Below, in pieces: positions 34,432-56,451 of a stretch of DNA of 64,000 bases. Position numbers and translations under genes: made by a program. Every line of letters starts with the position of its first letter. The first letter of the stretch is position 1. The stretch is taken from assembly GCA_964252035.1 (NCBI GenBank), contig OZ176202.1. The stretch is one strand, 5' to 3'. Below the pieces are notes generated by a model that saw nothing but the letters and a program-made list of their open reading frames with translations, did no database searches and was not told where the DNA came from. This stretch comes from Podarcis erhardii (lineage: Eukaryota).

Positions 34432-34594
34432 AACATAGGAAGCTGCCTCATATTGAGCTGGACCATCTAGCTCATTGGCTCTCCAGGGTTTCAGGCAGGG
34501 AACCTGCCTAACCTTACCTGGAGAAGCTGAAGATTGAACTTGAGACTTTCTGCCTGAAAAGCAGATGCTCTACCACTGAGCTACAGCCCTTCCC
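34432..34594 (-). mobile_element. tRNA-derived SINE with a CR1-like tail (second family)
   Basis: Minus strand GGGAAGGGCTGTAGCTCAGTGGTAGAGCATCTGC head and ...CAGCTTCCTATGTTTC tail; related decayed copies at about 38195-38340 (-) and 40346-40515 (+). Confidence 0.68.
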
Positions 34595-43963: not shown

Positions 43964-46112
43964 AATTAGAGGATTCAGCCTAAGTATATTTTAGAATCAG
44001 GTATCAAATTTAAAAATTAGTTTCTAACTTCTGAGCGGCAAGGTCACATCCTGGATTCTCAGTACAGAGCACTTCATATGACAAGAATGATGTTTTTTGA
44101 TGGGTGGAAAATGATATAATTCCATAATTTCTTGTGCACACAGGGTACTTTTGATAAATCTAATGCACAAATTAACATGTTTAGTCAAACAAAGTTGTAC
44201 TTTGTATTAAAATTGCTTAATGGTTATGCAACTCTTTTGAAAAATCTCATTATTTATGCTGCTTATCTTTCAGCCACCTACGCAGCTTGAAACCGATTGA
44301 AACTTTAAGGCTTTTTGACAATGCCAACAATAACACATCCATGCAAGAAATGTTAGAGGCTAAAATAATTAGGCACTGCTTTTTACATGGCATTGTTTAT
44401 CATTCCAAGTTCAGAGTAGCAAAAGTGTGTGTCTTAAAACATTTCAGTTATTACAGAACAATGTAATAATTTGCAGAACGATTACTGATAAAACTCTACC
44501 AAGTGAGTCATTGGACTTTTATCATGCAAAAACTGATAGGATTTCACAACAAACAGAGCTGCAATCCTATGAGATAAAGTGGTATTAAAATCAATTAAAC
44601 TTTCTTCTCAGAAAACATGCATCAGATAAGTCTCAAAGCTGCTATCGGAAAAGCATTTGCTCTTGAAAAAACTGACTCGAAAGGGACATCAAGCCCACAA
44701 TGTTAGATATACTTATTAAGATGTGGCGTGTATGTTTCTTGAATCATGGGAAGGAAGGAGGCAGACAGGCTTGGAGGAAATAAAACATACAGAAAGGGGG
44801 CAGAGAAAGAAATTAATCTCCCTCGCCCAAGAAGCAACAAACAGACCACTCAGAAAAGAGAGGCAGGAGAAACCAAAAAGACACATGGGAGCAGGTGAGG
44901 GAAGGGAAATGAAACGGAAGGTGCCTCCAGACTGTCAGTATTTTGTGGGAGGGAGTCTACGCATATTGGAAATTAATGTTTGTGCAATTAAAATGGATTT
45001 AAGTGCTCTGCTGCTCTAGTGCTAGTGCAAAAAAAATTAAAAAGAACATTGCCTTTTTGTGGTTTGGAAAGTGATGAGGAAATGCACTGAAAAGTGTGGG
45101 ACGCATGAATGATTAATAGGAAAACGCCCACAAGCAATTCAGGATGAATGCTCATTATGATATAACCTCCCAGCATGCTTTGTGTAAGCAAATCAAAATG
45201 AGTGCTGAACACACTGGACACGCCCATAGAACTCTGCTTTCTTCTTGGTGCCAATCTCAATCTGGGGGAAAAAGAGAGAGTGGTAAGAAACTGGAATCAG
45301 TGATACTCCTCCTACTTCCTTTCAAAGCTTTCTGTAGTTTTCCAATGAGAGATTGTTCCTTTCTCAATTCCAAGGAATACAGAAAAGAAGTAAACTCCTG
45401 GAGAGGGGCAGGAGTGCAAAAGTTTCACAGGCACTGGAGGAGGCTTTCAGGGGCACCATTGCATCTGCCACACTGGGGACACCAGGCCTAATATAATGGA
45501 TGCTGTCAGGTGAGAGCTTATGGTGGAAGGAATCTGGCATTTCAACAGAGCTGGTACTTTTGGTAGTCCTGCATCACAGATCTTTGCCAGGATCTGTGTT
45601 ATCAACACATTTTATGAATCACCAGTTAAAAATGTAATTATCACTTTTATTTCATTTCCTACTTATCTCACCGTTTACAATTCCCCATACACATCTCCTC
45701 AACAATGTATATTCTCCTGTGATTTAGGATAATACTTTTATGCATCAAATGAAGTATATCAGAGATAGCCAATATGCTGCTATCCCATCATAACTTGTGG
45801 CACAGACCTTTCTACCTAGCATTCTCCCAAGAGAAAAAGGCTTCACACAACTCACTCTTCTTCCAGTTACATACAATCCTCCATATGTGGAGCAAGAATC
45901 AGTTTTAAAATGAAACTGAAGAGAGACTGGGTTAGTTGATCTCTTTTGTTGCAAATGCTTTGAAATAATTATGTGGTAAACCACCCCCTGGGGGGGACCA
46001 AGTGTTTTTTGTTCCTTGTTTGTTGGAACAGAACTCTGGTTCTATTCTGTTGTTTGGGGCCATGCAGACTGGAGAAAGCAGTCAATGAAAAAGTTAAAAG
46101 CTGATGGTGTTT

Positions 46113-46183
46113 CCTGCTTGGCAGGGGGTTGGACTCGATGGCCCTTGTGGTCTCTTCCAACTCTATGATCTATGATATTCTGT
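46113..46183 (+). mobile_element. CR1-type 3' tail fragment
   Basis: GGCAGGGGGTTGGACTCGATGGCCCTTGTGGTCTCTTCCAACTCTATGAT. Confidence 0.6.
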
Positions 46184-46308
46184 GAATAGAGATTAATTCT
46201 TTCGTAGTTATTTCAAATAACACACATTTTAGAAACTCAAAGCTGCCTCTTTTCAATCCTAGTAATGCTATCTTACTGACAGAAAGTAAAGCAGCATTCA
46301 GATTACAC

Positions 46309-46785
46309 CAGTGTCCAAACTTTTTTCAAAGAGGGCCAGATTTGATGAAGTGAAGTGCCATGAGGGCCGACCAAAGGGCCAACCAATGTTGTTGACCTTT
46401 TTTTAGGATTGAAGTTGTTGAGCATAGAGTATTTTTCCAGATTAAAAGGGAACCATTAAACAGATTTTTAAACATTTGCCATGTCAAACCAGTTCACTAA
46501 AATCTGAAGTGAACATTTTATAGGACTATGGCAGGACCCATCTAAAGCTTATGGCAGGGGTGGCCAACTCCCAAGAGACTACGATCTACTCACAGAGTTA
46601 AACACTTGCAGTAATCTACCCCCTTTTGGGGGGTTCAGGTCAAAGTTGTTGAGTTTTTTCAGGGAGGAGGTAAAATGTTGAGCTTTTTTGGGGGGGAGCC
46701 ACAGTTGTTCAGCTTCTTTGGGGGGAGCCAACGGTCTACCAGTGATCTACCGCAGATGCCCATTACTCATTGCTAGGCTTCCTCT
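46309..46785. mobile_element. Composite of hAT-like non-autonomous elements
   Basis: CAGTGTCCAAACT and CAGGGGTGGCCAACT ends, GATCTAC motifs, GTTGTTGAGC repeats; boundaries approximate. Confidence 0.45.
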
Positions 46786-46954
46786 TTTTGTTAACTCTGC
46801 CTTTTTGCTTTGGAAAACAAACTTGCTAAATGCACCCTGCCACATGCTCCTGTGCTTTTTAGAGGCCTAATTACAATAGTATCTTCGGTTTAATGCATTT
46901 GTCTATTTTTAACTTTGTAAATTACCCTGGAATCATGAAGATCAACATTAAAAA

Positions 46955-47185
46955 ATTCCTTCCAGTAGCACCTTAGAGACCAGCTAAGTTTGTTATTGGT
47001 ATGAGCTTTCGTGTATGAGCTTTCGTGTATGAGCTTTCGTGTGCATGCACACTTCTTCAGATACCATGCACGTGCATGCACACAAAAGCTCATACCAATA
47101 ACAAACTTAGTTGGTCTCTAGTTGGATTTTTTTTTAATTTTGTTTCAACTACAGCAGACTAGCACGGCTACCTACCTATATCTAG
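46955..47185. mobile_element. Penelope-like retroelement pLTR remnant, inverted pair
   Basis: GTAGCACCTTAGAGACC...TATGAGCTTTCGTG...CTTCTTCAGATAC and downstream CAGCAGACTAGCACGGCTACC resemble reptile Penelope termini; 36-bp inverted arms at 46974-47009 and 47085-47120 (35/36 identical). Confidence 0.7.
46997..47066 (-). ncRNA. Putative minimal type I hammerhead ribozyme (Penelope-associated)
   Basis: Minus strand reads UGGUAU-CUGAAGA-A-GUGUG(CAUG)CACAC-GAAA-GCU-C-AUAC..., i.e. the CUGANGA/GAAA core, a 5-bp helix II, a palindromic AGCU helix III, a CUC cleavage triplet, and helix I UGGUAU/AUACCA. Confidence 0.65.
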
Positions 47186-47381
47186 AAGATCAACATAGTT
47201 CTAATTGAAATAAATTTAAAAATTCAATAGCTACACAGCCTTCTCAACTGCTGCATCTCCTATGGCGAGGGCTGCAACCCCTGTGGAAGTATTTCGCCTT
47301 TGTACTATCTTTAATGGCCCCAAAGCCCTGCCCAACCCTCATGCTTCTAAGCCTTGTGTAGTCTGCCTTTTACATAAGAGG

Positions 47382-47583
47382 CAGGGCCAGCCCCTTCATG
47401 AGGCAAGGTGAGGCAACTGCCTCGGGCAGCAGAATCCACAGGGGCAGCAGATCTAGATGTAAGTCTTCAGTCCCCCTCCATGTTGCCTGATGTAGATCTT
47501 CAGGCACCCCTCCATCCCTGGTGGGGAGGGGGAGGCCGCCATTTTGTGGCTCGCCTCAGTTGCCTCAATGTATTGGGCCACTC
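47382..47583. mobile_element. Degenerate hAT-like MITE next to the PEX7 CpG island
   Basis: CAGGGCCAGCCC left end; subterminal TGAGGCAA/TTGCCTCA inverted motifs; right end decayed. Confidence 0.42.
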
Positions 47584-47589
47584 CTTTGC

Positions 47590-48540
47590 ATTGGGTTAGA
47601 GAACAGGATTAACGGCGCTTCGAACCACGGCAAGGAAATGAAGCTCGCCCAACTCTGCTCGCTGTCGTGTTTCACGTTTCTTCCCCGCACGTGGGGGGAA
47701 ACGTCCCTCGAGCTGCGACGAGGAACCGGAAGCCTCGTTGAAGAAACACCGAGCAGGCTACTGCTATTGCAAGCCCTAGGGCGCTTCTCCATTACCGCCC
47801 CGCCCTAGAAACTGGAGAGGCGGCGCTCTTTGCCCAAACCTATGATGGCGGCGGAGGCGACCTCTGCCCACAGTTCCGGCGGCCGGAGCTGGGCGGGGCG
47901 ACGGCGACGGGAGCGGGACCTCCCCACAGAGAAGGAGAGGCGGCAGCGCCTCTCCCGCAGCCGGCCCGGGATAGCTCGAGCGACGCGGTTGAGGCTATGA
48001 GCCGCGGCGGCGGAGGTGGTGGTGGCGCGCCGGCGAAGCCCCCGAGGGCGCAGGCCTTCCGCCTGCCCGGCCGCCACGGCTACGCGGTCGAGTTCTCGCC
48101 TTACCTGCCCGGGCGCTTGGCCTGTGCTGCCTCGCAGTACTACGGAATTGCAGGTGAAGCGGCAAGCAGAGTGCGCATGCGTGGAGAGGGGCAAAGCCGT
48201 GTTGTGTTTTCCAGGCTGCCCGGTTCTTCCGGACCATCGACGTTGGTTGAAACATGTGGTTTGCCGGGCAAGCAGTTCTTCCAAAAAGAGTAATCTAAAA
48301 AGAAATAGAACGGCATCCCGTTTGCATGTTTGCTCAAGCCCCGCTAATTTAGGATTACCTTCCATGCAAGCGTGATCATCTCAGCCTTGTTGACTTGACA
48401 GCAAAGCCCCACGGATTTCGGTTGGGCTAGTTAGTTGCTGCCGCCTAGGCTTGAGGGCTGCAGCCTTTAGATGAGTATGCGCTCAGTGGGGCTTGCTTTG
48501 GGAGCAAGCACGCTTGTGGTCGGGCTCGTGCTGCGACGTT
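47590..48540. promoter_or_regulatory. CpG island covering the PEX7 promoter and exon 1
   Basis: GC- and CpG-rich; GC boxes (CCGCCCCGCCC near 47797, GGGCGGGG near 47891); NRF1-like TGCGCATGCG at 48172-48181; boundaries approximate. Confidence 0.85.
47997..48153 (+). CDS. PEX7: PEX7 (PTS2 receptor) coding exon 1 (157 nt)
   Basis: [52 protein letters not shown](G), matching PEX7 [18 protein letters not shown]; GT donor at 48154; lies in a CpG island. Confidence 0.95.
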
Positions 48541-55712: not shown

Positions 55713-55858
55713 ATAGAATCATAGAACTGTAGAGCTGGAAGGGATCACAAGGCTCATCTAGTGTAACCCCCTACAATGTAGGAATCTTTTGCCCAACATA
55801 GGGCTAAAATCCACAACCCTGAGATTAAGAGTCTCATGCTCTACCAACTGAGCTACCA
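55713..55858 (-). mobile_element. tRNA(Lys)-derived SINE with a CR1-like tail
   Basis: Minus strand GTAGCTCAGTTGGTAGAGCATGAGACTCTTAATCTCAGGG head (A box) joined to CCCTTCCAGCTCTACAGTTCTATGATTCTAT tail. Confidence 0.8.
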
Positions 55859-56451
55859 GAACAGGGGTGAATAATATCTGGGCAGAGGTTTAGGAGATAG
55901 TCATAGTGAGCAACAGAAATGGCTCTAATCATTTGGACCATAGGGACCGTCTTGGAGAGCACATTGTAAATTGCTTTGAGGTTACTTTTTAACAATCAAG
56001 TGGTATGTGAATTTTATGAAATAAATAATAAGTAACAGAAAGGTTTCAGCTTTCTGTTTTAGGAAGGGGAGCCTCGGTTCTAAAGTAAAGACTGCAGTAG
56101 TACATTTCCACAAATAATACAATGCATCTACCTACTCATTTATTTCTCATTTCATATATCATATCATGTGGCTAAATAAGCTTGCATCTTTATGAACGTG
56201 TTACTGAGACTTCAGGTATCATTAAGCCTTATATAGCAAATAGTTTAATTCCTGGTGTTAACAAGAGAAAGCTTTCATTGTGGGGCTTTGTTTTGCTAGA
56301 TATGTAAACATTTCAGAAGGTTTATGCTTTAATTGATTTCATAACAAATATTCTCACTGGTGGCAGGACAGAAAAAAACCACTCTAACTATAGTTTGTCT
56401 AACTTGGATGCTTTGTGAACTTGTAAACTGAAATTAATCCAATATTTGCAG

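What the first reader, a model, noticed from the sequence alone, without database searches (positions are those of the whole stretch)
46997..47066. Penelope-derived hammerhead ribozyme whose 14-nt triplication may make it a monomeric self-cleaver upstream of PEX7
Seen: the minus strand reads UGGUAU CUGAAGA A GUGUG CAUG CACAC [GAAAGCUCAUACAC]x2 GAAAGCUC AUACCA. This contains the CUGANGA and GAAA core, helix II, a CUC (NUH) cleavage triplet and helix I. Established: Penelope-like elements carry minimal type I hammerheads whose palindromic helix III needs dimerisation, and an extra A between A9 and G10.1 is tolerated in a viroid hammerhead. Inference: the AGCU of unit 1 can pair in cis with the AGCU of unit 2 (10-nt loop) or unit 3 (24-nt loop). 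Only unit 3 restores the full 6-bp helix I (UGGUAU/AUACCA). A slippage duplication may thus have turned a dimer-dependent ribozyme into a monomer. It lies about 0.95 kb upstream of the PEX7 start and points away from PEX7, so divergent transcripts from the PEX7 CpG island could run through it.
Basis: partly seen in the sequence, partly recalled or inferred. Interest (0 to 1): 0.8.

Follow-up and report, generated by a model that had tools for sequence, protein, structure and literature searches.

The report
Penelope fold-back relic with tripled hammerhead piece
This is one decayed copy of a very abundant lizard-type Penelope retrotransposon end that carries a minimal hammerhead ribozyme motif with a 14-base piece tripled by slippage, and because it sits inside a long hairpin it is probably an ordinary relic, not a newly self-sufficient ribozyme.

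Summary
On the minus strand, 47066-46997 holds CUGAAGA, an extra A, a 5-bp helix II, then GAAAGCUCAUACAC twice, then GAAAGCUC and AUACCA. The 14-nt repeat has 3.1 perfect copies. PEX7 exon 1 starts at 47997 on the plus strand.

All sequence hallmarks of the published Penelope-like-element (PLE) minimal hammerhead are met. Reads show the block 46948-47163 belongs to a hugely repeated family whose usual copies carry a single unit.

The motif is the minus arm of a 231-bp fold-back insertion (46949-47179) flanked by a target-site duplication. The insertion is two head-to-head, 5'-truncated PLE ends, one with an extra ~42-nt tail, which is the known PLE insertion signature.

Any transcript entering from the PEX7 side makes a hairpin of about -80 kcal/mol. 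A fold using units 1 and 2 at the hairpin tip lies about 9 kcal/mol above it. Even the isolated 70-nt RNA gives the active fold only ~0.3% of the predicted ensemble, less than an inactive unit 2:unit 3 pairing.

One RNA-seq run showed no reads in the unique flanks. Short-read contigs broke at the repeat, so the triplication was not verified independently.

Verdict: an ordinary PLE relic with a slippage repeat. Monomeric self-cleavage is unsupported but not excluded. Other first-stage notes of this scan (280 mention hammerheads in this genome) describe the same kind of fold-back on other DNA.

The parts
46932..46948 (.). Left copy of the target-site duplication (ATCATGAAGATCAACAT)
   Evidence: Direct repeat D3, 15 of 17 identical to 47180-47196. 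It abuts the point where read depth rises from single-copy to repeat level. Sequence read.
46949..47064 (-). Minus arm of the fold-back: a PLE end 5'-truncated 4 nt before CUGAAGA. It carries the intact minimal hammerhead, the tripled unit, the 3' flank and a T-run.
   Evidence: Family similarity stops at 47064 (loose ends of 46-118 records) and at about 46950 (table 7). Summed word depth is about 1e6 against about 25 in unique flanks (table 2). Arm-to-arm alignment.
47027..47064 (-). Complete minimal (dimer-type) hammerhead motif using unit 1: GUAU / CUGAAGA / bulged A / GUGUG-CAUG-CACAC / GAAA / GC / UC / AUAC
   Evidence: Only descriptor match in the window; 0 of 200 shuffles match. The features are those listed in PMC4209133.
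46997..47066 (-). AUACCA). It includes 2 bases of junction filler, which lengthen helix I to 6 bp with unit 3.
46999..47042 (.). 14-nt tandem repeat, 3.1 perfect copies, each unit starting and ending in AC. It is a slippage-type expansion of GAAAGCUC plus the 3' strand of helix I.
   Evidence: Most family copies have one unit: the loose-end consensus before 47027 runs straight into the flank ...ACCAACTAAGTTTGTTCTTG (table 7).
47065..47071 (.). 7-nt filler (CATGCAC on the plus strand) between the two truncated 5' ends
   Evidence: It lies between the family boundaries at 47064 and 47072 (table 7).
47072..47179 (+). Plus arm: an inverted PLE end 5'-truncated inside helix II. It has no CUGANGA box, its GAAA has decayed to AAAA at 47084, and it carries an extra ~42-nt tail (about 47138-47179).
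   Evidence: Inverted repeats I1-I3. The loose-end consensus before 47072 is ...ATCTGAAGAAGT in other copies. At 47084 the window has A where most family copies have G (tables 3 and 7). Alignment.
47180..47196 (.). Right copy of the target-site duplication (ATCTAGAAGATCAACAT)
   Evidence: (D3).
47997..48155 (+). Context: first coding exon of PEX7. The ORF opens with [14 protein letters not shown]...[29 protein letters not shown]. The exon end is approximate.
   Evidence: The PEX7 identification rests on my own recall of the human N-terminus and was not tested with a search.

Best explanation
The motif is part of a 231-bp relic of one Penelope-like-element (PLE) insertion, flanked by a target-site duplication (46949-47179). 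The relic consists of two very short, 5'-truncated copies of the element's end joined head to head (a fold-back). The minus arm happens to keep a complete minimal hammerhead of the dimer-dependent PLE type. The plus arm lost the CUGANGA box by truncation and its GAAA by CpG decay. Later, replication slippage between AC dinucleotides tripled a 14-nt piece (GAAAGCUC plus the 3' strand of helix I) in the minus arm. The locus most likely does nothing. If transcribed from either side it folds into a long hairpin rather than a hammerhead. Shown: the anatomy, membership of a very high-copy family, the single unit in most family copies, and the predicted energetics. Inferred: one insertion event primed on both DNA strands, slippage as the origin of the repeat, and lack of function.
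For: - Inverted repeat 46974-47014 / 47080-47120, 41 nt, 95% complementary, plus inner arms.
- RNA hairpin of -80.1 kcal/mol, z -11.8.
- Candidate TSD, 15 of 17 identical, exactly at both ends.
- Reads: 46948-47163 has a summed word depth of about 0.8-1.4 million against about 25 in unique flanks. About 9,800 contigs were laid in run X1 and about 8,900 in a second species.
- The loose-end consensus shows that family copies have one unit, continue upstream of 47064 with different sequence, and carry CTGAAGAAGT before 47072.
- A contig of a relative about 5% diverged (X15 record 16, 47130-47370) bridges the right junction, so the insertion is older than that split.
- Literature: PLE insertions are highly 5'-truncated, often have an inverted 5'-truncated copy directly adjacent, and have a 30-40 bp tail at only one end (PMC8557442). 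The Anolis PLE protein cleaves and extends both DNA strands and starts reverse transcription at two internal sites (PMC11167929).
- Min-HHR hallmarks are in PMC4209133, which also reports dual min-HHRs on opposite strands and occurrence in turtles and snakes.
Against: - No reverse-transcriptase ORF lies nearby, so the link to an autonomous PLE rests on the motif and the insertion signature. The one lizard PLE consensus I could read (Poseidon_Ac) has a hammerhead of different sequence.
- The three units are 100% identical and keep all three CpGs while the other arm lost its CpG. That fits a recent expansion but does not exclude selection.
- A small run labelled 'RNA?' (X15) has a contig at 47130-47370 that stops at the element, with nothing on the far side. 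I cannot explain this.
- Nearest-neighbour energies ignore hammerhead core and tertiary stabilisation.
Confidence: 0.85

Rival explanations
1. One reading: the triplication supplies a cis helix III (AGCU of unit 1 with AGCU of unit 2 or 3). This would turn a dimer-dependent minimal hammerhead into a monomeric self-cleaver acting on divergent PEX7-promoter transcripts.
For: The pairings exist on paper. Unit 1:unit 3 gives 4-bp helix III, 6-bp helix I and an intact core. Unit 1:unit 2 gives 4-bp helices I and III. The unit 1:unit 2 fold can sit at the tip of the long hairpin when the upstream arm pairs with unit 3, at a predicted cost of +9 kcal/mol rather than +34. A helix III engineered into single PLE min-HHRs gave some cleavage in vitro (PMC4209133).
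Against: The predicted share of the active fold is 3e-3 (unit 1:unit 3) or 7e-5 (unit 1:unit 2) in the isolated RNA. The inactive unit 2:unit 3 pairing is more favoured, at 5e-2. In context the shares are 7e-25 and 4e-7. In growing-transcript folds, a 25-bp hairpin with unit 1 is already the minimum-energy structure before units 2 and 3 are fully made. There are no loop-loop tertiary contacts. Published engineered cis versions cleaved mostly at non-physiological Mg2+. No reads in the unique flanks in RNA-seq run X23; the one-directional promoter-upstream reads end by about 47490. No reads ended at the hammerhead site of the active Anolis PLE either. It is a single locus with no evidence of selection.
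Confidence: 0.05
2. The fold-back acts as a hairpin RNA (a source of small RNAs or an editing/dsRNA substrate) or as a DNA cruciform or boundary element near the PEX7 promoter. On this view the hammerhead is irrelevant.
For: A near-perfect stem of about 45 bp, -80 kcal/mol. Weak resemblance to miRNA-hairpin models (mir-466, 34 bits, E 2.5e-4). Repeat-family reads are present in RNA runs.
Against: All miRNA hits are far below their gathering scores (34 against 85) and appear equally on both strands, as any long hairpin would. The RNA reads on the repeat run on into unlike sequence (share 0.99), so they come from other copies. Thousands of similar copies exist, so nothing singles out this one.
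Confidence: 0.05
3. The triple repeat is an assembly or polishing artefact in a hard-to-assemble PLE fold-back, and the true locus has one or two units.
For: No contig shown spans 46972-47130. PLE tandem/inverted structures are known to trouble assemblies (PMC8557442).
Against: A 44-nt array of period 14 contains no repeated 31-mer, so it is not intrinsically unresolvable. The flanks match run X1 with 0 differences (records 5-8). Perfect short expansions are common natural slippage products.
Confidence: 0.05

Closest known systems
Minimal hammerhead ribozymes (min-HHRs) of Penelope-like elements (Cervera and De la Pena 2014, PMC4209133)
   Same: Type I topology; CUGANGA and GAAA boxes; an unpaired nucleotide between A9 and G10.1; the G10.1-C11.1 pair; no loop III with palindromic 15.2/16.2 (AGCU); short helix I (4 bp in the family); massive copy number; occurrence as dual motifs on opposite strands; presence in reptiles.
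   Different: This copy has the GAAAGCUC-plus-helix-I-3'-strand piece three times. Helix II is 5 bp with a CAUG loop, at the short end of the published range.
PLE insertion architecture: inverted 5'-truncated copy plus a one-sided 30-40 bp tail (Craig et al. 2021, PMC8557442; Anolis PAc biochemistry, PMC11167929)
   Same: Head-to-head 5'-truncated copies; a ~42-nt extension on one arm only; flanking target-site duplication. The plus arm ends 88 nt after its cut site, close to the PAc reverse-transcription start (111-118 nt into the ORF, with the cut site at 26 nt).
   Different: Both arms are tiny (116 and 108 bp) and there is no ORF. The hammerhead sequence differs from the Poseidon_Ac consensus, so this is another PLE or a non-autonomous family.
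Single min-HHRs given an engineered helix III (S. mansoni and D. virilis constructs, PMC4209133)
   Different: Those were designed stem-loops mimicking the dimer helix III, and even they cleaved weakly and mostly at non-physiological Mg2+. Here helix III would be 4 bp closed by a 10- or 24-nt loop, with a competing inactive register.
Animal non-LTR retrozymes (PMC7229834; bioRxiv 10.64898/2026.07.22.740005)
   Same: PLE-related type I hammerheads in non-coding repeats of reptiles and amphibians.
   Different: Retrozymes are tandem repeats of whole units (51-972 bp), each with a full hammerhead. Here only 14 nt is repeated and there is a single CUGANGA box.

Membership tests
PLE minimal hammerhead (min-HHR) | Conserved core: C3-U4-G5-A6-N7-G8-A9, G12-A13-A14-A15.1, U16.1, H17 | tested here: met
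   CUGAAGA ... GAAA GC U C on the minus strand, 47060-47031.
PLE minimal hammerhead (min-HHR) | [quoted passage not shown] | tested here: met
   CUGAAGA-A-GUGUG...CACAC-GAAA. The feature is listed in PMC4209133.
PLE minimal hammerhead (min-HHR) | No loop III, with palindromic 15.2-16.2 so that helix III forms between two copies | tested here: met
   A-GC-U = AGCU. The single-unit homodimer is predicted at -40.4 kcal/mol, but that predicted structure pairs helix II and helix I between the strands rather than forming the double-hammerhead helix III.
PLE minimal hammerhead (min-HHR) | Member of a large consensus family within the genome | tested here: met
   Summed depth of about 1e6 against about 25 in unique flanks; about 9,800 contigs laid; the same family is present in a second species.
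PLE minimal hammerhead (min-HHR) | Located in the pseudo-LTR of an element that encodes RT and GIY-YIG endonuclease | tested here: inconclusive
   No full element lies in this window. The insertion signature (inverted truncated copy, one-sided tail, TSD) fits PLEs. The Poseidon_Ac consensus has a different hammerhead sequence.
PLE minimal hammerhead (min-HHR) | Self-cleavage (as dimers) | not testable with these tools
   Needs in vitro transcription and cleavage assays.
Canonical type I hammerhead (Rfam Hammerhead_1 and relatives) | Match to the Rfam covariance model | tested here: not met
   No hammerhead family listed at E up to 10 in 46000-48000, nor at gathering score in the whole window.
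Monomeric (cis-acting) hammerhead | A helix III closed in cis, stable enough to make the three-way junction the main fold | tested here: not met
   Active folds have P 3e-3 and 7e-5 in the isolated RNA, and 7e-25 and 4e-7 in context. This is prediction only, not an assay.
Non-LTR retrozyme | Tandem repeats of a unit that each contain a whole hammerhead | tested here: not met
   There is one CUGANGA box. The repeat unit is 14 nt.
miRNA precursor families (mir-466, MIR1222 and others) | Score at or above the Rfam gathering threshold | tested here: not met
   Best hit 34 bits against a threshold of 85, with similar scores on both strands.

The most novel reading that the evidence does not exclude
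Slippage gave a dimer-dependent PLE hammerhead its own helix III, and also gave the fold-back enough slack. With the upstream arm paired to unit 3, units 1 and 2 could form a small hammerhead at the hairpin tip and cut after 47017. This would be a natural one-step conversion from a dimeric to a monomeric ribozyme, sitting in a promoter-upstream transcript of PEX7.
Probability: 0.04. Interest if true: 0.55.

Novelty: new member of a known kind. Interest (0 to 1): 0.15.

Why it matters
As it stands it matters little. It is one of thousands of Penelope-derived hammerhead relics in a reptile-type genome, and both the motif class and the fold-back insertion architecture are published. Three points are useful.

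- The locus is a clean, small example of the PLE signature: a head-to-head pair with a one-sided tail and a TSD. This fits the both-strand priming seen in vitro for the Anolis element.
- A motif reading that ignores the 50 nt upstream can mistake a hairpin arm for a free ribozyme.
- If the triplicated RNA did cleave as a monomer, it would show how easily slippage can change the dimer/monomer regulation of hammerheads. A one-day in vitro assay could test that.

Tried and rejected
- Rfam at permissive E and at gathering score over the whole window gave no hammerhead hit. It returned only sub-threshold miRNA-hairpin look-alikes on both strands, which I rejected as generic hairpin matches.
- Looking for other copies in the window by pattern with 3 mismatches, by blastn with word size 7, and by a loose regex found only the locus itself and its own inverted arm.
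- One pattern call failed on gap syntax.
- Read laying could not verify the triplication, because Logan contigs break at the repeat borders.
- I tried to read Lunse et al. 2017 on PLE hammerhead dimers, but it is not held, so I cite it only through the review PMC6765202.
- I compared the motif with the Poseidon_Ac consensus from the supplement of PMC11167929. The architecture is the same but the helix sequences differ, so I rejected 'this is Poseidon_Ac'.
- The search of earlier findings by place near the locus, by sequence, and by 'monomer helix III duplication' returned nothing.
- I considered an ORF starting at the AUG in loop II, as in PAc. The plus arm hits a stop after about 29 codons, so I did not pursue it.
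- I did not try to identify the species. Other notes of the scan call it a lizard.

Full report
**Observation.**
- Tandem Repeats Finder reports a 14-nt period with 3.1 copies and 100% matches at 46999-47042. The repeat finder shows the same three copies in register (D1).
- I wrote a descriptor from the published features of Penelope-type minimal hammerheads. It matches once in the 64-kb window on both strands, at 47064-47027 minus, and never in 200 dinucleotide-preserving shuffles.
- That match uses unit 1 alone with a 4-bp helix I (GUAU/AUAC). The ordinary dimer-type motif is therefore complete whatever one makes of the repeat.
- The ORF starting at 47997 on the plus strand opens with a PEX7-like N-terminus. 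This identification rests on my recall of the human protein and I did not test it.
- That ORF lies in a CpG island at about 47500-48500. The stated distance of about 0.95 kb and the divergent orientation are correct.
- No Rfam hammerhead model matches, even at E up to 10. The only hits are far sub-threshold miRNA-hairpin models, on both strands.

The motif is one arm of a long inverted repeat.
- The repeat finder gives arms 46974-47014 and 47080-47120 (41 nt, 95% complementary) and inner arms 47027-47050 / 47072-47095 (24 nt, 96%).
- As RNA, 47125-46960 folds into one long hairpin of -80.1 kcal/mol, z-score -11.8.
- The 74-nt motif on its own folds no better than shuffles, z -0.66.

**Repeat family.** Laying four public runs on 46300-47900 showed that 46948-47163 is a very high-copy repeat.
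- Summed word depth is 0.8-1.4 million there, against about 25 in the single-copy flanks of run X1. About 9,800 contigs were laid. A second species (organism D, run X9) shows the same picture. The tool warns that this is not a formal copy number.
- The loose-end consensus tells what typical family copies look like:
  - Before 47027 they run straight into the flank (...ACCAACTAAGTTTGTTCTTG), so they have a single unit.
  - Beyond 47064 they continue with different sequence, so the family's helix I is GUAU/AUAC. The two extra pairs seen here come from junction bases.
  - Before 47072 they carry ...ATCTGAAGAAGT, so the upstream arm is a plus-strand hammerhead copy cut off inside helix II.
  - At 47084 most copies have G where the window has A, so the plus arm's GAAA box decayed to AAAA at a CpG.

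**Anatomy.** The repeat block is bounded by a 17-nt direct repeat, 46932-46948 and 47180-47196, with 15 of 17 identical (D3). I read this as a target-site duplication.
- Between the two copies lie the minus arm (47064 down to 46949), 7 filler bases (47065-47071) and the plus arm (47072-47179).
- Aligning the arms shows they match through the hammerhead 3' half, the flank and a T-run. After that the plus arm alone continues for about 42 nt.
- This is the published signature of Penelope-like-element insertions: strong 5' truncation, an inverted 5'-truncated copy immediately adjacent, and a 30-40 bp tail at only one end (PMC8557442).
- The purified Anolis PLE protein cleaves and extends both DNA strands and starts reverse transcription at two internal sites that define the tail (PMC11167929). 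It is my inference that this produces such fold-backs.
- The plus arm ends 88 nt after its cut site. That is close to the 85-92 nt implied for the Anolis element (start 111-118 nt into the ORF, cut site at 26 nt).
- The Poseidon_Ac consensus has a hammerhead of the same architecture but different helices, so this is another family.
- A contig of organism D, about 5% diverged, bridges the right junction (X15 record 16, 47130-47370). The insertion therefore predates that split.

- All the sequence features are met here.
- Association with an RT-encoding element could not be tested in this window. Cleavage cannot be tested with these tools.

I evaluated them with ViennaRNA constraints.

| RNA | Fold | Predicted result |
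|---|---|---|
| Isolated 70 nt | Ensemble | -13.2 kcal/mol |
| Isolated 70 nt | Unit 1:unit 3 helix III, 6-bp helix I (active) | -9.1 kcal/mol, P about 3e-3 |
| Isolated 70 nt | Unit 1:unit 2 (active) | P about 7e-5 |
| Isolated 70 nt | Unit 2:unit 3, which puts 14 nt between helix II and G12 (presumed inactive) | P about 5e-2 |
| Real context | Unit 1:unit 3 | +34 kcal/mol above the ensemble |
| Real context | Unit 1:unit 2 at the hairpin tip, upstream arm paired to unit 3 | +9 kcal/mol, P about 4e-7 |

- Snapshots of a growing minus-strand transcript show a 25-bp hairpin with unit 1 already by position 47026, before units 2 and 3 exist.
It is the least unlikely route to activity.
- These energies ignore core and tertiary stabilisation. 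Against that, this motif has no loop-loop contacts.
- Published single min-HHRs given an engineered helix III cleaved weakly and mostly at non-physiological Mg2+.
- For the active Anolis element, no RNA-seq reads ended at the hammerhead site, and catalytic mutants did not affect insertion in vitro.

**Transcription.** In the one true RNA-seq run laid (X23, organism D, about 12% of the run read), the unique flanks 46786-46893 and 47218-47379 have zero reads.
- Reads on the repeat itself run on into unlike sequence (share 0.99), so they come from other copies.
- A few one-directional reads cover 47488-47757. If the library is of the usual stranded kind, these would be a short promoter-upstream antisense transcript that ends well before the element.
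- A small run of uncertain type (X15, 'RNA?') has a contig at 47130-47370, depth 6, and nothing at 46786-46893. I cannot say whether this is RNA, which strand it is, or why it stops at the element. It remains unexplained.

**Verdict.**
- Supported: the identification as a Penelope-derived minimal hammerhead.
- Not supported: the functional idea. The locus is best explained as a decayed PLE fold-back with a slippage expansion.
- Not verified: the triplication against independent reads.
- Odds: I give about 5% to genuine monomeric self-cleavage at this locus and score interest low.
- Other notes of this scan: other first-stage notes describe many Penelope fold-backs with hammerheads in this genome (280 notes mention hammerheads). 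I saw them after establishing the fold-back here and treat them only as agreeing leads.

Noticed in passing
window 47130-47370 (and 47488-47595): A contig of run X15 (small library, type guessed 'RNA?', related species) covers the unique stretch between the CpG island and the fold-back at depth about 6. It stops at the element, with zero depth at 46786-46893 and at 47596-47900. The true RNA-seq run X23 has no reads at 47218-47379. Strand and nature are unknown.
   Followed up: partly
window 47488-47757: In RNA-seq run X23, a few reads, all with the first mate on the plus strand. This would fit a short divergent (promoter-upstream antisense) transcript of the PEX7 CpG island that ends before about 47380.
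   Followed up: partly
window 46300-46460, 46516-46785, 47380-47487: Three further blocks with repeat-level read depth (thousands to about 230,000 against about 25). The middle one contains a 29-nt tandem repeat, 2.9 copies, at 46647-46730. These are other interspersed repeats around the fold-back and were not identified.
   Followed up: no
window 34520-34590 (-) and 55790-55862 (-): Two tRNA-like matches above the Rfam gathering score (40.9 and 33.6 bits). ARAGORN calls only the first one, as tRNA-Glu (TTC). Either may be a gene, or a tRNA-derived SINE or pseudogene.
   Followed up: partly
window 47997-48155 (+): The PEX7-like first exon opens with a run of seven glycines after MSR, encoded in the GC-rich core (GC 0.69) of the CpG island.
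   Followed up: no
window 47027-47042, 47013-47028, 46999-47014: All three repeat units keep their CpG (CACGAAAG), whereas the single copy in the opposite arm has lost it (CACAAAAG, 47084 A). This is compatible with a recent expansion or with low methylation at the CpG-island shore.
   Followed up: no
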